A stretch of 64,000 nt of DNA from Dimorphilus gyrociliatus (taxonomy: Eukaryota; Animalia; Annelida), in the NCBI GenBank assembly GCA_904063045.1, contig CAJFCJ010000003.1:1922001-1986000 (forward strand). The letters run 5' to 3'. Both the position numbers and the translations under genes were made by a program. The notes below the pieces were generated by a model, which saw nothing but the letters and a program-made list of their open reading frames with translations, was not told the origin of the DNA and ran no database searches. Within the stretch, counting starts at the first letter, position 1, and each line of letters starts with the position of its first letter. Below are positions 43,422 through 54,303 of the stretch, in pieces.

Positions 43422-44792
43422 ATGGACGTTAAAGAAGCGGTTGTTGGAGGACAGGTTTGTATTTTGATATATCTTTACTTTCGGAGTTCATCAGCTTAAA
43501 AGTTTTTTATTTTGCTTTCACCGCTATGATTCACGAATCACAGCCAACAGCCAAAATTTCAGATAGGACTAGCCATAGGGACGAATTTGTACCTTTTGAT
43601 ACGGAAACAATGATATCTTGTCGACCAAAAATTTTCAAAATGACGAATAGTTTTGAATTATCCCATGGAGAGAAGTTTGAGAGTGAAACTACGCATTCAG
43701 TAAGATCAATAATTACACAGTATACAATTACATCTAAAAGTGACCGGTAGACTTTAAAATAACCTTAAAAGTTACACTATCTTACTTTTATGCCTCTTTA
43801 AAATGTTTATACAACGCCATTAAAAACTGACAGAAAGATTACTATCCGCGCAAAAACATCAATAAAAGAAAAGCCATAGTTCAAAAAGAAAATGGTATAT
43901 TCTACGAACATTTAAGGAATGACATGAAAACGACCCATGGAGAGTCGTTTCCCCCTAGAGAAAATTCCGTTGCGCGAACTTTGCGTAAGTTTTTATATTT
44001 ATTGAATATTTATTGACGTGCTTTTTTATCGATAATTTTTTTATATATCGACAGCGTTCATTCCAGTTAATAAGCGAGAAACTCTAGCTGCTCTGGAGAA
44101 TAAAACTGTGACTAGATCAGATTATGTTAACTTTGGTAATCAAGCGCGCTCTAAGCCTATACTACCTAAATCGAATTCCGTAGTAAGTAAGGAGCCAATG
44201 CAAAGTACAACATCATATCAAGAATCCCATACACCGAAGCCAGTTAGTCCTATGACGAAACCAGAATGGGCACAAAAAAAACCCTATGAAGCTCCAGTCA
44301 ACAAATTACCCGACGTAACGACATACAAGGAAACTTTTGTTAAAATGCAAACACCTCGTCCAGATCCCAAAAAACATGATGATAACGAAATATTTTCTAA
44401 AGAGAATGTAAATTATCGTACAATGTACGAAAATGCCTATTCTAGTAGGCAAAATTCTAAGAAAAGAATGCCAATAAAGCATATCGATAATATTCAACTT
44501 TCAAGTGACAAGTTTCAAGGAGCGTCAGTTTACAAAGACCACTATAACGGTTTGTTAACACTTAAATATTTCGTAAATTATATAGAAACAGACTGTTTAT
44601 AATTCGTGTATATTCATAGGATATGATAAAAAACAAACATTCTCAAAAGCAAAAACTATGACTGAAATGACCGAGAAGTACTCGAAAATGACCGCTCCTG
44701 CTGAAGAAAATTGTCAAGACGTTGGTGCACAATCGAAACCGGTCAGATTGGCCCCTCTAACGAATCGTCCATCATTGCCGTCTCAAAGCTAA
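43422..44792 (+). CDS. SAXO/FAM154-like axonemal microtubule inner protein
   Basis: The spliced ORF (MDVKEAVVGGQ|PTAKISDRTSHRDEFVPF..) carries repeated Mn-like motifs: TTHSKDYYP, TTHGESFPP, TRSDYV, STTSYQESHTP, VTTYKETFVKM, TMYENAYS, SVYKDHYNG. Stop at 44790-44792. An X-box-like element lies upstream. Confidence 0.6.
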
Positions 44793-45879: not shown

Positions 45880-48800
45880 ATGGAAATAAATGGTATATAA
45901 CAAACATTCTTTTTTAATTTTAATGACTTGGATATTTTCAAAAAAGACGAGATTACTATCGAGTCAAGCAAACTCCTAAATGAGTATGAAGAATCCACTT
46001 CCAACGATGATATATATTGTGCTTACCAGTCAAAAAATTTAATCGAGTCCAAAAAACACCCGGGAGATATTGTGGAAGCTTCGTCTCTTAGTGTAAGTCT
46101 TCACTGAAAAAGAATATTCATCTATTCTTTTCGATGGTCATAGTAGCTTTGAAGTAGATTTTAAAAAAAAATAATTATCAACAGGCGGTTAGTCTTCCCG
46201 AACCTTCTTATCCAATTTCTGAATGGTTGAAATCAAACTGTCCTTGTTTTGAACAACTCAGTGATCTTCAAATTGATGGTATTTTATATGCTGTAAGTTT
46301 CATAATTTTATATTTTATATACTAAATTATATCCATTTTAAAACTGTTCACTCAGTGTCAGAGGCATCAACTATTTCTACCCAATAATACAAGGGCTGGA
46401 TTTTTCTTGGGGGATGGTGCAGGAGTTGGTAAAGGGAGACAAGTAAATCTTCATTATTATTACAGTACATATACACTGTATATATTATATATTTTAAAAG
46501 ATAGCTGGTGTTATTATTGATAATTACGTACGAGGACGAAAGAAGCATGTCTGGTTTAGTGTCTCCTCAGATCTAGTTGTCGATGCTAGGAGGTAATATC
46601 CCTTTAGCAAGAGAGAGAATTATTTTACGATCTTTATAACATATATACTGTATCATGTATTTTTAGGGACATTTCCGACTTAGGTTGCACAATAAAAGTT
46701 ATCAATGGCTGTCAAGAACTTGATAGTAAAACAAAAGCTCTTGGACTGTCTTCAGATTATAAAGAAGGAGTGTTATTCTCCACTTATGCTATTTTATCTT
46801 GTCCAAGTAGAATCAGACAAATAATAGATTGGTGCGGGGGCTCAGAATTCGAAGGTTGCCTGGTATTTGATGAATGTCACAAAGCTAAACATCTTGTTTT
46901 GGTAACGATTTTCTAATTTCCTAATATTACTTCATTTTAATATTTTTTGATAGGGTAATGAAGATGCTAGTACAAAAGTGGCCTCAGCTGTTCTTCATTT
47001 ACAAAGAACTTTGTCAAAAGCTAGAATACTATATTGCAGTGCTACTGGTGCATCTGATATTAAAAATATTGTTGGTTATGCAAAAATATAGACAACTATT
47101 ATATTGTGTGTTACCATATAGGCATTTATGGAACGTTTAGGACTTTGGGGAGATGGCACTCCATTCAAAAGTTTCAATAACATCCTGAGTAATTTCAATA
47201 AAGGAGGTTTGGCAATGGCAGAAATGTTAGCGATGTATATGAAAGCTGTCGGAACTTATGTGTGTCGTAGCTTGAGTTTTAAGAACGCACAAGTATATTA
47301 TTTCTTTCAAGTTGTCTTTTAGATGTAAAAGGCTTTTCTTTCAGTTCGAAACTAAGAAAATAGAATTAACACCAAAGCAAGAGAAAACCTATAACGCTGC
47401 TGTTAAGTTATGGTAGAATCCCATTTCTTCTTCGGCAAATAATTTTTATTACATTCATAGGAGAGAAATCTTCGTAAGCTTATCAACGGCCGTCCGAAGA
47501 ACAAAATGCTCATCGAAAACTATAAATGCTTCATTCTGGTCTGCACATCAACGATTTTTCAAACAAATGTGGTGAGGACAGATGATTTGATTAAATAAAA
47601 AACTGATATTGAATTCTCTTTGTTAAGCATGGCAATTAAATTACCAATTGTGTTGGAAGAAACTAAAAAAGCGCTTGTGAGTGACAGCTGCGTTGTTATA
47701 GGATTACAGAGCACGGGCGAAGCTGGATTACAAGCTTCTTTAAAGAAAAATGAAAAGATAAATGATTTCATTTCAGTTTGTCGACACATTGTTTTACAGT
47801 TTATTACAAATCATTTTCCAACTACAATTGAGAATGCGGTAGGCATGCTTACTTGCATAAAGTTTATCCGTTTAATTTTTTGGTCCGTATCTTACAAACA
47901 GAATATGAGTAGCGTAAAAGTAGAAGATGAGTGGTGCACTCAGGCGAAAGAAAAGTTATGTGACTATGCTTCAAAAATAGAACTGCCCAATGGGTAACAA
48001 AAGTGGTACTTTATATTTTGAAAATATTAAATTAGTATTTGCAGATGTCTTGATGAACTGATAAATACCTTAGGTGGTAAGGATATCGTTGCTGAGATGA
48101 CAGGAAGGCGTTACGGACTATATAAAATTAAAGAAAAAGTTCATTGCATCTCTCGCTACTCTGACAACGACTCATTAGAAACAACAAACGTTTCAGAGGT
48201 ATTTATTTAGTTTGTCGATACAATAAGTCATATCAAAATTTTTAGCGAGACAAATTTATGAGGGGCGAAAAACTGATTGCTGTAATTTCGGATGCGGCCA
48301 GCACAGGCATATCTTTGCATGCAGACAATAGAGTTTTAAACAAACGGCGAAGAATACATGTTACATGGGAGCTGCCTTGGTCGGCTGAAAAAGCTGTTCA
48401 ACAACTAGGAAGATCATTAAGAAGTAATCAAACTAGTGCCCCTATTTATCTGCTGCCCGTTACCAATCTATCAGGAGAGATGAGATTTGCTTCTACAGTT
48501 TGTAAACGCCTGCAGCATCTAGGAGCTTTAACTAGAGGGGATAGACGAGCAGCCTCTGAAGGAGCTTTTGCTGAGTTCAATTTTGATAATGAATTTGGCA
48601 AACAAGCTTTACAAACAATGTATACAGCTATATGTCGCAACAGCTTACCACAGGGTCTAGCTGTTCAAGACCTATGCAAAAGTTATTCAGATATGACTGC
48701 TATGAACAAATCATTGAAGGAGTGCTTATTTTTTGTCGATCTTATAAGTGAAGAGACTGCTATAAATGTTAAAGAAAATCAGAATCGAGATGTTTCAAAA

Positions 48801-50166
48801 TTTTTTAATCGCATATTAGGATTGCCAGTTAAAAAACAAAAAGAGGTGTTTAAAAGTTCTTTATCCTAATCTGTTGTATTAAACTGTTGTCTTTGATTAT
48901 CTTTTAAAAATTAACAGATATTCGAATATTTTACATCGTGCATGGAATATGGTATAAAGAAAGCCAAGGAAGAAGGGAGGTTTGTTTGCTTATACTTTTG
49001 AAGATTTAATCTCTTAAAATTCCAATAGATATGCAGCTGGTTTTCTCGATATAACAGCCTCATCTATAGCCATTTCGGATGGTCCAAGGAGAATATTTGA
49101 TCATCTATTGAATATTAAAATTGAGTTAGCTTATAATTGCATTTAGTATTAAGAATATAGCGGTTTTTGATTATTGGGCTTTATCTTTGATAGACACATT
49201 TCATTGGAAATAGACAGAGGAATGAGTTGGGATTCAGCTTTAAATCGTTTAAAATTGACTTCAAATACAGGAGATGAAGGCTTTTTTATTTCTAAAAGAG
49301 ACATTTACGGCAGAAAACGAATAGTCCTTGCTACTCTGAAGAATTCCGGAGATAACATTGTGATAATTTCCAGGTTTAAGAAATACTTTCTTTCTATGAA
49401 AATATGCTGATCTTTCTTACAGACCATCTACTGGAGCTTCTAAATCAGAAGAACGTCTCAACGACTTTCAAAAACGCTATAAACGATTGAATAAACTTTC
49501 AGAAGCTAAGGAATACTGGGAAGAGGAACACAATCGAAGCGCTTCTGAGTGCATTCATGGAGCTTCATGTAGACTGATTTCGTGCACAAGTAAGTCTGAA
49601 AGTCTTTGATATTAAATTTAATATTACTGATCATAAACAGTTGGAAAAAGGAAATACCAAATTGACTTGTTGTGTGGGGAAATTCTTCCAATACTTAATC
49701 AATTGGAAAACCTAGTCGCTCAGGCCAGCAGCATTCTCTCAAGAGCCGAAAGAACCGTTAGGGCAGTTAAAGTCCAATTAGAAAGTGGCGAGAGAATTAT
49801 TGGCGTTAGATTTCCAGCTCATCTCCTTAGAACAGCTTCTGAAAAGTTGACAGTAATATTGCATAATAAACATTATCAGTATTTTAATAAAATTATTATC
49901 TATAGTATAATGGGGCTGGTTTACAAGAGGAGACTGTAATGACAGTCAAAGATGCACTATTGAAAAAAGCATTTATGAAACCCCCATCCATTAAAGACTA
50001 TTTCAAAAGTAATTCAAAGAAGAGAAGAAGCACAGACACTCAACCAAGTGTAGATAAAAAACAAAAAAAACTGTCAAAATGTCCAGTCTGTAATGTCTCA
50101 TTTGACGATTCTGTAAAATGGACAACACAATCCATGAATGATCATATGGATAATTGTGTATTGTAA
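45880..50166 (+). CDS. Strawberry notch (SBNO)-like SF2 ATPase with a C-terminal PIP-like motif and UBZ4 finger
   Basis: Motifs [98 protein letters not shown] and [18 protein letters not shown], then [20 protein letters not shown]. The final exon 49906-50166 is in frame. Confidence 0.92.
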
Positions 50167-50338
50167 ATGATTTAATACATTGTGTATTTTAATATACTAG
50201 AGTAAAATTTCAAGTTATTTCAACAAAGAGCGACTCTTAAGCACTATAAAGCACTTGCGACAGACAAAAATTATGCGGGCCTATGGTTACAAATAGCGCC
50301 ATCTATTCGAACGATCTTTGACCAAATCGATGAGAGCA

Positions 50339-51271
50339 ATGGAACTGATTGAGTCACCCCTATTCGGCCGGAATGTTTTTGACATGAGAACCTTCTGTGT
50401 GGTAACTGGGGCTAGCAAGGGATATGGAAAATGCATTGTAGATCATTTTTGCAAATTATTGGCTGCTGGTTCAGCTATGGTTTTAATAGCAAGGTCTGAG
50501 AGTTTATTACTGGATGTAAAGAATCAATTGGAGGCTGTACGATCTGAAATTCTGGTTGACATAAAAGCAACGGACTTATCTAAAGGCGATGAAGATACTT
50601 TTAAGGGTATTTTATTAAATTCTCTAAAAAATATTGGAAAGGCTGTAGAAGACTTCGATCAGGCTGTAATCGTACATAATGCTGCAAGTATGGGAGATAT
50701 AACTAAAAAAATGACTGAAATTGGAAGCTCTGGAAATATTAGAAAATATTTTGACTTAAATGTCACTTCCGTTATCAGTTTGAACCATGAATTTTTCAAA
50801 TTATTCAACAGGAAGACAGTGAAACAAGTCGTTGTCATCAATGTTACCTCAATATGTGCTATTCAGCCTTTTAAAACTTGGTCTTTATACTGTTCAGGTA
50901 GCTTTCCAAAAAATCTTATTCTTCCTTGATTGCATATCATGATTACAGGTAAAGCGTGTCGAGATATGCTATTTAGAACAATGGCTATAGAGGAACCAGA
51001 TATAAGGGTTTTAAATTGGGCTCCGGGACCATTGGATACAGATATGCAGGTACTAGCCCGGTCTCAAACTGGTGATACGGATTTAAAAGTTATGTTTGAA
51101 GGTTTGTGTCAACAGAAAAAATCTGTAATATACATAATTGTAATTTATTCAATAGATATGCATAATACGGGTAACCTTTTACCGTGTGAAGTTTCAGTAA
51201 AAAAGTTGGTTGAACTTTTGCAAGAAAATACTTGGGATACGGGATCGCATATTGATTTTTACGATATTTAG
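50339..51271 (+). CDS. SPR: Sepiapterin reductase (SDR family)
   Basis: VVTGASKGYG (Rossmann fold), IVHNAASMGD, LNVTS, NVTSICAIQPFKTWSLYCS|GKA (YxxxK across an intron), LNWAPGPLDTDM and a GSHIDFYDI end. Three exons; the start could instead be 50330. Confidence 0.93.
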
Positions 51272-51446: not shown

Positions 51447-54303
51447 TTATTTTATATTTAATTCTTTCGCCTGAATGGATGATGATATCACTTTACAATT
51501 TCTGAAAAGCTTTTTCACAATATTCTTAGCCGCCACTAAAACAAACAATTGAGGATATGAAAATACTATCATATAATATCATGAAAATTAACTTACTCTT
51601 GGTAGAAAGCTCCGGTGAGTCAAGTAGCCGATGCGTTAAAGTTCTTGCAACATCCTTAAAAACTATCTTATTCAGTAGCCTCTTCTTTTCATAGTACGGC
51701 TCCAATAATTTTACGATGTATTTTCCAAGCTCATCTTTCTTCAACTGTGGAACTTCTGTGCTCATCTTTGAATCCTCGGTACCAAGTTTTGGCTGCTCTA
51801 TCTGCGCCTTAGAAGCTGTAGTCTGTAAATGAGAAATCTTTGTCCTTGGCTTTTCATTTGATTCTACGCCAGTTTCTGTTTCTGATTTCGGAAATTCTAC
51901 CTTTGACTTTTTGGATGGTGCATCCGGGGTAGTCTAAAAATTTATGAATACTAGTTGGAAATATGATGAAAAATTTGAAACATTTCTTACGGGTTGATGT
52001 AATCGCTTTTTGTCTACTGTTGAGTCAATTTCGGGGCTGTTGTTTCCATTTTCAAAAAAATATGAGACAGGATTTATTTTGATGGGTTGTGTTAATAAAT
52101 CACAAGTCTTTGTTTCAGTTTCTTCAATCAACAGACTTGGATCTCCCAGCTGTTGATCAATATCATCTATTTCCGAGTAAGTCCTAGCTGATTTTATTAG
52201 TTCTCCCTGGATTGTTAAATTTCTAATACTTTTTATTTTTTTCATTACGTTCGACCTGTACATTGTTATATTACTCGTACTCATAAATATAGAATGTTCT
52301 TCCTTCACAGATAATTCTTGAAGCTTATCAAGTTGGCCAAAGTTTTGCAAGTTTTCCGTTAGAGCTTCAGTTATTAGTTTTAGGGATCCCTCTCTTATGG
52401 CCACAGTCATTTTGGGAATTTTCTGTGAGTTTGCATCTAATAGCAAACAGTTGACGGATGGTGGAATCCACTCGTTCTTTACCTGAGGCTTACGTTTAGC
52501 CAACTCTTCTTGTATAAATTTTGTTCTCTCTAGTTTTTCTTTTGCTTCTTCTCTCTCGGCTTTTAGACGTTGATTCTGATCATCTGAATTATCATAATCC
52601 CAATCGCCTCCTTTTCTACCTCCTCCGTAAAATTCATTTTCATCAAAATTACAGTTCTCTACTGATCTGCTATTATATTCCCTACTTCCAAATCGCAAAA
52701 ACTGCTCGGCAGATTTTCTTACCTCATCTTTGTTTCGGCAGAAGTCACAGTTCTGATTACAATTAGGAATGTCATCGGAAAAATATTTGGCTATTCCTTG
52801 ATGTCGACACATTGGATACTCAATAGATTTGATCAGGTGAGAAAAACTCTCTTTAGTAATCTTTCCTCTGTGATCATTGACTTTTCCCTAAATTAAATAT
52901 TGAAAATATTAGAAAAAATACTATAAAGATTTTAAATACCTTGGGTCTTTCATGGATTTCCTTCTGTATTAAATAGCTGACTGTATCTCGATCTCGTTTT
53001 CCATAATACAATCGGCAAAAAGATTGTTTACCATCTCTTCCTGCCCTCCCAGATTCTTGGTAGTAGGAAGCCATAGATTTTGGGACCGACCAATGAACGA
53101 CGAATCGAACGTTAGCTTTATCTACACCCATTCCAAAACTAATAGTTGCTGCAATAACAGGAACTTTACCATCTACCCAATCTTCTTGGACTGCTTGTCT
53201 TTCTTTTCCAGACAACCCAGCATGATAAGCCCTACAAGGGAATCCCTGCTTTTCCAGATTAGCAGATACTTCATCACACTCTGCTCGAGTTCGGCAATAA
53301 ATTATACCTGCACCATATTTACCCTAAAATATAACATAATGCATCTAAGAAAATTAACGACAAGTTACAATATACCCAATCAATCTTAGCTGCATCATAC
53401 TTTTTGTGCAAACTTAACGAGGAATGAATAAAACTTATTAGATTATCATATATGTTGTCAATTAGATCTTTGAAAACCACTTCATAAAATAAGTTCGATC
53501 GGAAGCAGCTGGCTTTGAAAACTGAGACAGGTCTGCGCAATCTGTTTCCATGGGCAATGAATAAGAGTGTTAAAAAGTAGCTTTATGCTTACTTTAAAGA
53601 CATCAAAATGTCATCTGTTACTTTAGGAGTTGCCGTAGCAGTTAAAGCTAGACAGCTTACATTTTTCAAGCATTTCTCCCTAAATTCCCCAACTTTCAAG
53701 TAGTCAGGTCTGAAGTCATGCCCCCATTGGGAAACACAATGGGCTTCATCAACCACTAAGTAAGAAACTTTTCCTCTGTTGTTTAAATCCACCGCAATGG
53801 ACTGTTACAAAAAATTATAGTAATATAAAAAATGATATTTAAGTTGTAATTTTGATTAGATACTTGAAACAGTTTTGTTGCTGCTTGTTCAGGAGTAATA
53901 TAGAGTAATTTAATTTTTGGTGTATTACTTTTCAGGTCTTCAAGAACTTTTTCTTTTTCACTGTTTGTTAGTTTAGAATTATATGTGCTGGCTTCTATTT
54001 GTAACTTTTTGAGATGAGAAACTTGATCTTGTATCAGCGCAATGAGAGGAGATATAACAATAGCCGTTCCGGTCTTAACAACAGCAGGTAGTTGATAGCA
54101 AAGCGATTTTCCAGCCCCAGTGGGCATAGATATAAATACATCAGAAGCATCTAGTCAATCAATAGCTTTGAGCGATAAAACAGAAATGTATATATAAATA
54201 ACTTACTCTTTATTACGGCTTCTACTGCTCTTTCCTGGAGATTCGTTTTAAATTCTTTATGTCCAAAAATAGAGTTCAAAGTAGATCTTGTGTCTAAATT
54301 CAT
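51447..54303 (-). CDS. RECQL5: RecQ5 DNA helicase
   Basis: [52 protein letters not shown] and [12 protein letters not shown]; Zn-binding [12 protein letters not shown]; a KIX-like segment; and a C-terminal SRI-like domain ([20 protein letters not shown]). Confidence 0.93.

What the first reader, a model, noticed from the sequence alone, without database searches (positions are those of the whole stretch)
49853..50166. Strawberry-notch-like ATPase fused to a PIP-box-like motif and a UBZ4 ubiquitin-binding finger: candidate PCNA-coupled genome-maintenance factor
Seen: after the conserved SBNO C-terminal region, a canonical 53-nt GT-AG intron (49853-49905, phase 0) joins in frame to [86 protein letters not shown]. 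Known: SIKDYF fits non-canonical PIP boxes (hydrophobic-x-x-aromatic-aromatic). [12 protein letters not shown] matches Rad18-type UBZ4 (CPVC..INxHLDxC), including the ubiquitin-contacting Asp, with a 6-aa loop insertion. PIP plus UBZ is the signature of proteins recruited to ubiquitinated PCNA (for example SPRTN, Pol kappa, SNM1A). Canonical SBNO1/2/Sno are described as transcription/chromatin regulators without this tail. Inference: a distinct SBNO paralogue acting at stalled forks or in damage tolerance, a role I do not know to have been described for this family.
Basis: partly seen in the sequence, partly recalled or inferred. Interest (0 to 1): 0.78.

Follow-up and report, generated by a model that had tools for sequence, protein, structure and literature searches.

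The report
Second strawberry-notch lineage with PIP-like/UBZ4 tail
The annelid gene really does join a strawberry-notch-type ATPase to a tail carrying a PCNA-box-like motif and a Rad18-type ubiquitin-binding zinc finger, and this tail marks an old, unstudied sister lineage of the known SBNO/FGT1 proteins that may work on ubiquitin-marked replicating or damaged chromatin.

Summary
The window is Dimorphilus gyrociliatus, and the gene is the publicly annotated, unnamed DgyrCDS2335. Intron-less contigs of a public run, 100% identical to the window, carry the 49852>49906 junction. They confirm at least 15 of the 19 introns of my 20-exon model (four further joints were not shown).

The body is a bona fide SBNO ATPase with AAA_34, Helicase_C_4 and the SBNO alpha/beta domain.

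The tail is not a local oddity. Of 138 relatives of at least 900 aa in one clade ("group B"), 116 have a conserved ~25-28-aa module ending in P-x-T-[ILMV]-x-x-[FY]-F. Of these, 74 also end in CPxC-x15-H-x3-C. Core chlorophytes carry a UBA domain in place of the finger.

Group B holds animals from sponges to amphioxus, a choanoflagellate, green algae, euglenids and oomycetes. None of 45 group-A proteins (Sno, SBNO1/2, plant FGT1) has either element. The A|B split has 100% SH-aLRT support, and Auxenochlorella has both genes.

A profile of the fingers matches the solved UBZ4 domains of Pol kappa, WRNIP1, RAD18 and FAAP20 (E 4e-7 to 1e-5).

PCNA and ubiquitin binding remain inference. The box lacks the canonical Gln, and AlphaFold models it with high confidence, so it may dock on the protein itself. 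I found no paper describing this.

The parts
45880..50166 (+). Whole coding span of the SBNO group-B gene (DgyrCDS2335). It has 20 exons, 19 GT-AG introns of 47-92 nt, and encodes 1060 aa in my cDNA-backed model.
   Evidence: Manual model. At least 15 introns were confirmed by intron-less contigs. The first mini-exon was taken from public protein P0267. Pfam gives AAA_34, Helicase_C_4 and SBNO.
45880..45892 (+). Exon 1 (ATG, 'MEIN' plus 1 nt), followed by intron 45893-45946.
   Evidence: The N-terminus of P0267 maps here. It is not covered by the cDNA contigs, which start at 45955.
46410..46442 (+). Walker A / P-loop ([11 protein letters not shown]).
   Evidence: Translation of exon 46356-46442. 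It lies just upstream of the AAA_34 Pfam match, which was scored on the following exon.
46869..46880 (+). DECH box (Walker B / motif II).
   Evidence: Translation. AAA_34 E = 3.3e-18 on this exon.
48246..48845 (+). Helicase_C_4 exon (SBNO C-terminal helicase lobe).
   Evidence: Pfam PF13871 E = 3.5e-70. 100% identical to P0267 residues 521-720.
49194..49589 (+). SBNO alpha/beta domain, in two exons split by intron 49374-49422.
   Evidence: Pfam PF25373 E = 1.4e-10 and 1.6e-3 on the two pieces. AF2 pLDDT is above 90.
49853..49905 (+). Last intron: 53 nt, GT..AG, phase 0.
   Evidence: Sequence. cDNA joint 49852>49906.
49930..50004 (+). Conserved group-B module E-x4-V-x2-K-x-L-x-K-A-x3-P-x-[ST]-[ILMV]-x-x-[FY]-F; here [26 protein letters not shown].
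   Evidence: Alignment A4 of 50 orthologues, with E and F invariant and T at 90% or more. Found in 116 of 138 group-B and 0 of 45 group-A proteins.
49981..50004 (+). PIP-like box PPSIKDYF (positions 1-8: P1, I4, Y7, F8), with basic flanks.
   Evidence: Sequence. The only PDB sequences that the module profile touches are PCNA partners LIG1 and ATAD5, not significantly.
50005..50079 (+). Basic linker predicted to be disordered (KSNSKKRR...KKQKK). It resembles a nuclear-localisation signal.
   Evidence: AF2 pLDDT 48-59. In orthologues this linker is 11-288 aa long.
50080..50157 (+). C-terminal CCHC finger of UBZ4 type: CPVC-x17-H-MDN-C.
   Evidence: Four invariant ligands, with N and D at 90% or more, in 63 orthologues. 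The family profile matches the Pol kappa, WRNIP1, RAD18 and FAAP20 UBZ domains. AF2 gives a beta-beta-alpha fold.
50164..50166 (+). Stop codon (TAA).

Best explanation
This is the Dimorphilus gyrociliatus member of an ancient second lineage of strawberry-notch ATPases, which I call group B. Group B is sister to the lineage that holds Drosophila Sno, vertebrate SBNO1/2 and plant FGT1. What is shown: a complete P-loop/DECH SF2-type ATPase body is spliced to a tail made of three parts. The first is a conserved ~25-aa module ending in a PIP-like box (PPSIKDYF). The second is a basic disordered linker. The third is a terminal UBZ4-type CCHC finger. What is inferred: the finger (or the UBA domain that replaces it in chlorophytes) binds ubiquitin, and the FF box binds the PCNA hydrophobic pocket or a PIP/RIR-type pocket. 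Together they would tether the ATPase to ubiquitin-marked replication or repair sites such as K164-ubiquitylated PCNA. This is how ZRANB3, SPRTN, WRNIP1 and Pol eta/kappa are recruited. My confidence is about 0.95 for the architecture and the paralogy, about 0.7 for ubiquitin reading, about 0.4 for PCNA as the FF-box partner, and about 0.45 for the whole story.
For: Splicing: cDNA contigs carry the junction, and the public protein has the same tail. SBNO body: Pfam AAA_34, Helicase_C_4 at 237 bits, and SBNO. Conservation: 116 of 138 group-B proteins have the module and 74 also have a C-terminal finger, always in that order; 0 of 45 group-A proteins have either. Paralogy: the A|B branch has 100 SH-aLRT in IQ-TREE PMSF and 99 in FastTree. 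Auxenochlorella has one gene of each group. UBZ4: the 63-finger profile matches Pol kappa UBZ at 4.4e-7, WRNIP1 at 5.6e-7, RAD18 at 1.2e-6 and FAAP20 at 9.4e-6, each over the whole finger. The sponge orthologue passes Pfam UBZ_FAAP20 gathering at 30.3 against 25 bits. The N-x-H-[ILV]-D-x-C helix motif is 90% or more conserved. AF2 gives a beta-beta-alpha fold at pLDDT 75, and the top Foldseek rows are UBZ-ubiquitin complexes. Domain swap: chlorophyte orthologues have UBA at the same place, at 43 and 39 bits against a 22.4 cut-off. PIP-likeness: aliphatic residue at position 4, aromatics at 7 and 8, Thr/Ser at 3, and flanks of about +3 and +4 charge. Published analysis of 77 PCNA binders finds that 34% lack Gln1, that Pro is tolerated there, and that positive flanks drive affinity (PMC6881253). 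Some orthologues add a second, canonical Q-x-x-L-x-x-F-F box (P0052, P0259, P0241).
Against: No binding was tested, and I could not model any complex. Gln1 of the PIP box is absent across the family. The box is only the end of a longer conserved module, which suggests a larger or different interface. AF2 models the module at pLDDT 86-91 in a monomer. This fits either docking onto the SBNO domain or a conditionally folded motif, and I had no coordinates with which to tell them apart. The window's own finger is divergent: it has a 2-aa insertion and Met for Ile/Leu, and on its own it matches no Pfam UBZ model or PDB chain. The module profile's matches to LIG1 and ATAD5 are not significant (E 0.11 and 0.54). 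Known SBNO/FGT1 biology concerns transcription and chromatin (PMC5040591), so the ubiquitin target could be a histone. Some orthologues have lost the finger, including nemerteans, Bugula, Picocystis and Aphanomyces.
Confidence: 0.45

Rival explanations
1. The tail reads ubiquitylated chromatin rather than PCNA. The UBZ4 or UBA element binds ubiquitylated histones or transcription factors, in line with the co-activator and remodeller role of Sno/FGT1. The FF module binds some other partner, for example a REV1-CTD-type RIR pocket or a remodeller subunit.
For: Family precedent is transcription and chromatin: FGT1 binds H3 and remodellers (PMC5040591). The FF box lacks Gln1 and sits in a longer conserved module. 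UBZ and UBA are generic ubiquitin readers. FF motifs of this type are shared between PCNA, REV1 and other pockets (literature retrieved; otherwise my own knowledge).
Against: The tail is exactly what distinguishes group B from the transcription-linked group A. The order FF box, then linker, then terminal UBZ4 is that of SPRTN, and PIP followed by a ubiquitin finger is that of ZRANB3 (own knowledge). The only PDB sequences resembling the module are PCNA partners, though weakly.
Confidence: 0.25
2. The conserved FF module is an intramolecular element, a latch or capping segment that packs on the SBNO C-terminal domain, and not a free linear motif. Only the finger would be a recruitment device.
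For: AF2 gives pLDDT 86-91 for residues 251-270 of the C-terminal fragment, while the linkers on both sides are low at 67 and 48-59. The conserved stretch is ~25 aa, longer than a PIP box.
Against: The fold shared with all other SBNO clusters ends at about residue 245-252, before the module. The spacer between domain and module varies widely in length among orthologues. High pLDDT in disordered tails is also typical of motifs that fold on binding (own knowledge). I had no coordinates with which to check contacts.
Confidence: 0.15
3. The terminal CCHC finger binds nucleic acid or another protein rather than ubiquitin, and only resembles UBZ4.
For: The profile also touches C2H2 fingers over its N-terminal half. 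The Foldseek E-values are about 1. The window's finger is divergent.
Against: Whole-finger matches are to UBZ4 domains only. The ubiquitin-contacting Asp and the N-x-H-x-D-x-C helix are conserved. A UBA domain substitutes for the finger in chlorophytes.
Confidence: 0.08
4. The tail exon is a mis-join or belongs to another gene.
For: None was found. Without splicing, the frame would run 27 codons further to a stop.
Against: One cDNA contig spans the junction. Orthologues from many phyla carry the same tail. tblastn aligns the tails of P0003 and P0005 to this exon.
Confidence: 0.01

Closest known systems
Strawberry notch / SBNO1 / SBNO2 / let-765 / plant FORGETTER1 (group A SBNO)
   Same: The ATPase body has the same order of domains (AAA_34 P-loop lobe, Helicase_C_4, SBNO alpha/beta domain). 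Identity in the helicase-C exon is about 45-50%. The predicted C-terminal fold is shared up to about residue 245 of the fragment.
   Different: It is a separate clade (100 SH-aLRT), and both clades co-exist in one alga. Group A has no FF module and no terminal UBZ4 or UBA (0 of 45). Plant FGT1 has an internal PHD finger instead. NCBI's label 'FORGETTER 1-like' for group-B proteins is therefore misleading.
ZRANB3 (SNF2 translocase with PIP box, NZF ubiquitin finger and APIM)
   Same: An ATPase motor followed by a PCNA-box-type motif and then a small ubiquitin-binding zinc finger. ZRANB3 is recruited to polyubiquitylated PCNA (title and abstract of PMC5594246; details from my own knowledge).
   Different: The ATPase family is unrelated (SNF2, not SBNO). 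The finger is NZF rather than UBZ4. ZRANB3 has an HNH nuclease and an APIM, which I did not find here.
SPRTN, Pol kappa, Pol eta, SNM1A, WRNIP1, RAD18, FAAP20 (UBZ-bearing damage-tolerance factors)
   Same: The finger profile matches Pol kappa, WRNIP1, RAD18 and FAAP20 UBZ4 domains. The layout of PIP-like box, linker and C-terminal UBZ4 is that of SPRTN (own knowledge). Thr at box position 3 and a missing Gln1 occur in Pol eta and Pol kappa boxes (own knowledge).
   Different: None of them has an SBNO ATPase. The loop between the Cys pair and the His is longer here (15 aa in the family and 17 in Dimorphilus, against 11 in RAD18).
DNA ligase 1 and ATAD5 PIP-like segments
   Same: These are the only PDB sequences reached by the FF-module profile: LIG1 3-16 and 223-237 (RAPKTLSSFF) and ATAD5 421-436 (PPKTLANYF), with the same P-x-K-T-L-x-x-[FY]-F pattern.
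   Different: The E-values are 0.11 and 0.54, so this is a resemblance and not evidence of homology. Only the box is shared, not the upstream half of the module.

Membership tests
SBNO (strawberry notch) ATPase family | N-terminal P-loop lobe (Pfam AAA_34) with Walker A and a DExH box | tested here: met
   [11 protein letters not shown] and DECH in the translation. AAA_34 E = 3.3e-18 on one exon.
SBNO (strawberry notch) ATPase family | Helicase_C_4 lobe and SBNO alpha/beta domain | tested here: met
   PF13871 at 237 bits (cut-off 30.5). PF25373 at 41.8 bits (cut-off 24).
Group A SBNO (Sno/SBNO1/SBNO2/FGT1 orthologue) | Falls inside the clade that holds Sno, SBNO1/2 and FGT1 | tested here: not met
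   It falls in the other clade. The A|B branch has 100 SH-aLRT and 99.
UBZ4 (Rad18-type ubiquitin-binding zinc finger) | C-x2-C ... H-x3-C zinc ligands | tested here: met
   CPVC-x17-HMDNC. All four ligands are invariant in 63 orthologues.
UBZ4 (Rad18-type ubiquitin-binding zinc finger) | Helix motif [IL]-N-x-H-[ILV]-D-x-C with the ubiquitin-contacting Asp | tested here: met
   N and D are 90% or more conserved. The window has M-N-D-H-M-D-N-C: the Asp is present, and Met replaces Ile/Leu.
UBZ4 (Rad18-type ubiquitin-binding zinc finger) | Significant sequence-profile similarity to established UBZ4 domains | tested here: met
   Family profile against the PDB: Pol kappa 4.4e-7, WRNIP1 5.6e-7, RAD18 1.2e-6, FAAP20 9.4e-6. 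Six of 8 fingers hit Pfam UBZ_FAAP20. The window's finger alone hits none, but it scores 32 bits against its family profile.
UBZ4 (Rad18-type ubiquitin-binding zinc finger) | Beta-beta-alpha fold | tested here: inconclusive
   AF2 predicts strand-strand-helix at pLDDT 75. Foldseek's top rows are RAD18, FAAP20, WRNIP1, NDP52 and TAX1BP1 UBZ domains, but with E about 1.
UBZ4 (Rad18-type ubiquitin-binding zinc finger) | Binds ubiquitin | not testable with these tools
   Indirect support only: a UBA domain replaces the finger in chlorophyte orthologues.
PIP box (Q-x-x-[ILM]-x-x-[FY]-[FY]) | Gln at position 1 | tested here: not met
   Pro in the window and in most orthologues. Published binders lack Gln in 34% of cases, and Pro is tolerated (PMC6881253).
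PIP box (Q-x-x-[ILM]-x-x-[FY]-[FY]) | Aliphatic residue at position 4 and aromatics at 7 and 8 | tested here: met
   I4, Y7 and F8 in the window. F8 is invariant, and [ILMV]4 holds across 50 orthologues.
PIP box (Q-x-x-[ILM]-x-x-[FY]-[FY]) | Positively charged flanks in a disordered region | tested here: inconclusive
   The flanks LKKAFMK and KSNSKKR are basic. However, AF2 pLDDT over the box is 86-91, which is not typical of disorder.
PIP box (Q-x-x-[ILM]-x-x-[FY]-[FY]) | Binds the PCNA hydrophobic pocket and interdomain connecting loop | not testable with these tools
   No complex modelling or assay was available.
PIP degron (CRL4-Cdt2) | T-D at positions 5-6 and a basic residue at +4 | tested here: not met
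   The window has K-D at positions 5-6 and Ser at +4. The family consensus is K-N/S at 5-6.

The most novel reading that the evidence does not exclude
Group-B SBNO is a LECA-age ATPase dedicated to ubiquitin-marked replication or repair intermediates, a motor recruited by ubiquitylated PCNA through a PIP-like box plus UBZ4 or UBA. It would have been overlooked because it is missing from vertebrates, arthropods, nematodes, yeasts and land plants. If so, the SBNO family as a whole began as, or includes, genome-maintenance machines, and this would give a first biochemical handle on what SBNO motors do on DNA or chromatin.
Probability: 0.35. Interest if true: 0.75.

Novelty: new variant of a known kind. 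Interest (0 to 1): 0.62.

Why it matters
SBNO proteins are conserved and genetically important in Notch/EGFR signalling, inflammation and plant heat memory, but their biochemistry is obscure. A sister lineage whose only constant difference is a tail built like those of ubiquitin-PCNA readers gives a concrete, testable function for an SBNO motor. It would add a new family to the small set of enzymes recruited by ubiquitylated PCNA. It also corrects the database label 'FORGETTER 1-like'. The lineage is present in tractable organisms such as cnidarians, sea urchins, amphioxus, green algae including close relatives of Chlamydomonas, Ostreococcus/Micromonas and Euglena, so the hypothesis can be tested although humans, flies, worms, yeast and Arabidopsis appear to lack the gene.

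Tried and rejected
- Pfam and phmmer-vs-PDB with the window's tail alone gave no meaningful hit. Only family profiles connected it to UBZ4.
- Foldseek of the 36-aa finger model and of the 325-aa C-terminal model gave no significant PDB match. The weak extended-Tudor rows for the latter have TM below 0.25, and I disregard them.
- The ESM Atlas feature search with the tail gave no usable hit.
- The PDB search with the FF-module profile gave only two non-significant hits.
- Literature searches combining strawberry notch/SBNO/FORGETTER1 with UBZ, UBZ4, Rad18, PCNA, replication fork or DNA damage found nothing relevant.
- Earlier scan notes hold nothing on this gene.
- I considered a flatworm-style spliced-leader start, because no Met lay in the first long exon. 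I dropped it when the public protein showed a 13-nt first exon with the ATG at 45880.
- I considered a PIP degron; the T-D and +4 basic features are absent.
- I could not inspect AF2 coordinates, which are not exposed to scripts, so contacts of the FF module could not be measured.
- The full spliced protein has no reference, so I used the identical public protein P0267 and single exons as queries.

Full report
**What is in the sequence**

Positions 49853-49905 are a 53-nt GT..AG intron in phase 0.

I built the rest of the gene by hand from three-frame translations. The result is a continuous reading frame with short GT-AG introns of 47-92 nt. It encodes a P-loop ([11 protein letters not shown]), a DECH box, and the Pfam domains AAA_34, Helicase_C_4 (3.5e-70) and SBNO alpha/beta.

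**Is the last exon really joined to the SBNO body?**

Only one public run holds this stretch. Its kind is not on record. Its contigs lie on the window at 100% identity and skip every listed intron at GT..AG borders, so they are cDNA. One 1700-nt contig runs from the Helicase_C_4 exon across the joint 49852>49906 to 50162. Fourteen other listed joints coincide with my model, and four more were not shown.

Contigs cannot show rare isoforms, so intron retention (27 more codons, then a stop) is not excluded as a minor form.

The window is Dimorphilus gyrociliatus. The public protein DgyrCDS2335 (P0267, 1045 aa) is 100% identical over the 200-aa exon and has the same tail. It also supplied the 13-nt first exon, with the ATG at 45880. 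My cDNA-backed model has 1060 aa. It differs from the public model by 13 and 2 extra residues at two places where the contigs support the splice sites I use.

**Is the tail conserved?**

An exhaustive phmmer search with the Helicase_C_4 exon and a word search with the Littorina orthologue gave about 330 SBNO proteins. Their sources name the following:

- Animals: molluscs, annelids, nemerteans, bryozoans, echinoderms, amphioxus, cnidarians, sponges, Trichoplax and a flatworm.
- Close relatives of animals: a choanoflagellate and an ichthyosporean.
- Algae and protists: prasinophyte and chlorophyte algae, euglenids and oomycetes.

Almost all of them carry, after the SBNO domain, a module of the form E-x4-V-x2-K-x-L-x-K-A-x3-P-x-T-[ILMV]-x-x-[FY]-F. 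Many end in CP[IV]C-x15-H-[IV]-D-x-C-L.

Counts with profiles of the two elements:

| Clade | Proteins of 900 aa or more | With the module | With a C-terminal finger |
|---|---|---|---|
| Group B (the window's clade) | 138 | 116 | 74 |
| Group A (the other clade) | 45 | 0 | 0 |

All 74 proteins with a finger also have the module. The module is always upstream, 11-288 aa away (median 104). The profiles were built from the first clade, so only the zero in the second clade is an independent result.

The window's finger, left out of a 72-sequence profile, scores 32 bits against it. It has a 2-aa insertion relative to the family.

**Paralogy**

FastTree on 104 proteins and IQ-TREE (PMSF C20, quick search) on 51 proteins both split the family in two, with support of 99 and 100.

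- Group A holds Drosophila Sno, carp SBNO2, Schistosoma and Parascaris proteins, Marchantia and other PHD-bearing plant FGT1, and algal proteins.
- Group B holds the window's protein and all tail-bearing proteins.

Both groups contain animals and green algae, and Auxenochlorella has one gene of each. The split is therefore an old duplication and not a species split.

The published view that FGT1 is the orthologue of Sno (PMC5040591) fits group A. NCBI's name 'FORGETTER 1-like' for group-B proteins does not.

No vertebrate, arthropod, nematode, fungal or land-plant protein was among the best 120 relatives of the Littorina protein, although amphioxus and echinoderms were. This suggests loss in those lineages, but it is not a census.

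**What the finger is**

The window's finger alone matches no Pfam UBZ model and no PDB chain. Profiles do better:

- With 8 fingers, RAD18 and FAAP20 UBZ come up at 5.5e-5 and 2.9e-4.
- With 63 fingers, Pol kappa UBZ is at 4.4e-7, WRNIP1 at 5.6e-7, RAD18 at 1.2e-6 and FAAP20 at 9.4e-6, each over the whole finger.
- C2H2 arrays match only the first half of the profile.
- The sponge orthologue passes the Pfam UBZ_FAAP20 gathering score.

The helix motif N-x-H-[ILV]-D-x-C is 90% or more conserved. It includes the Asp that contacts ubiquitin in RAD18 and WRNIP1 (own knowledge).

AlphaFold2 predicts strand-strand-helix at pLDDT 75. Foldseek ranks UBZ-ubiquitin complexes first, but with E about 1.

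The strongest indirect argument for ubiquitin reading is a domain swap. Core chlorophyte orthologues keep the FF module but end in a UBA domain, well above the Pfam cut-off, instead of the finger.

**What the FF box is**

It fits the PIP pattern at positions 4, 7 and 8. It has the Thr/Ser at position 3 seen in several true boxes, and it has basic flanks. It lacks Gln1.

Published analysis of 77 PCNA binders reports that 34% lack Gln1, that Pro is tolerated there, and that positive flanks set affinity (PMC6881253). Some orthologues carry a second, canonical Q-x-x-L-x-x-F-F box nearer the finger.

A profile of the module reaches only two PDB sequences at E of 10 or less. Both are PCNA partners: DNA ligase 1 (its N-terminal PIP box and a second P-K-T-L-x-x-F-F segment) and ATAD5. 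The E-values are 0.11 and 0.54, so this is a resemblance only.

Three points count against a simple PIP reading:

- The conserved stretch is three times longer than a PIP box.
- AlphaFold2 on the C-terminal 325 residues, with 50 orthologues, gives this stretch pLDDT 86-91. The flanking linkers are at 67 and 48-59.
- That pattern fits either docking on the SBNO domain or a motif that folds on binding, and I had no coordinates with which to decide.

The fold shared with other SBNO clusters in the ESM Atlas ends at about residue 245-252, just before the module. The module is therefore an addition to the common domain.

**Reading**

The shown facts are the splice, the SBNO body, the conserved two-part tail, the separate clade and the UBZ4-type profile match.

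The inference is that the tail tethers the motor to ubiquitin-marked sites, most plausibly ubiquitylated PCNA. This rests on analogy with ZRANB3 (motor, PIP, ubiquitin finger), SPRTN (PIP, linker, terminal UBZ4), WRNIP1 and Pol eta/kappa.

Three rivals remain open. They are a ubiquitylated-histone reader with another FF partner, an intramolecular latch, and a finger that does not bind ubiquitin.

I found no paper that mentions this lineage or its tail. Databases only carry automatic labels such as 'UBA domain-containing protein'.

Read laying was given 5001 letters.

Noticed in passing
window 46902-47121 and 47293-47460: The public protein DgyrCDS2335 (P0267) lacks 13 aa and 2 aa that my model has near model residues 209-222 and 340-342. 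The cDNA contigs support the splice sites I use (46901|46954, 47070|47122, 47292|47345, 47412|47461), so the public model looks slightly mis-spliced there.
   Followed up: partly
window 45880-45955: The first exon is only 13 nt (ATG GAA ATA AAT G). The cDNA contig starts at 45955, so the start codon and the first intron (45893-45946) rest on the public annotation alone.
   Followed up: partly
P0004, P0253, P0256 and other chlorophyte orthologues (C-termini): Core chlorophyte group-B SBNO proteins keep the FF module but end in a UBA domain instead of the UBZ4 finger. Prasinophytes (Micromonas, Ostreococcus) keep UBZ4.
   Followed up: yes
P0002 (Tubulanus) 1250-1573; P0211 (Lineus): Nemertean orthologues keep the FF module but lack the finger. 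Tubulanus ends in GRPRK repeats that resemble AT hooks (Pfam AT_hook 17.1 bits, just under the 17.4 cut-off). This may be a swap from ubiquitin reading to DNA binding.
   Followed up: partly
P0025 (Macrostomum lignano) C-terminus: The flatworm orthologue has a degenerate finger (CPNC...RDHWAVC) that lacks the N-x-H-x-D motif and is followed by extra residues. It sits on a very long branch next to Dimorphilus in the FastTree tree, possibly through long-branch attraction.
   Followed up: no
PDB 7qnz chain A residues 223-237; 8ui7 chain A residues 421-436: Human DNA ligase 1 has an internal RAPKTLSSFF segment and ATAD5 a PPKTLANYF segment. Both share the P-x-K-T-L-x-x-[FY]-F pattern of the SBNO group-B module. 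I do not know whether these segments have been tested as PCNA boxes.
   Followed up: no
window 49930-49980 (upstream half of the module): The amphipathic basic helix V-[ND]-x-K-x-L-x-K-A just before the FF box recalls RPA32C-binding helices of UNG2 and SMARCAL1. This is from memory only and was not tested here.
   Followed up: no
window 50318-51271 (+): A short-chain dehydrogenase gene (Pfam adh_short, 3.6e-14; sepiapterin-reductase-like by eye) starts about 150 nt after the SBNO stop codon, which shows how compact this genome is.
   Followed up: partly
window 44036-44599 (+) and 51937-52812 (-): Two long open stretches flank the gene and have no Pfam match. The upstream one is rich in P/K/T/Y repeats. 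The downstream minus-strand one has a Cys-rich N-terminal patch. I did not identify either.
   Followed up: partly
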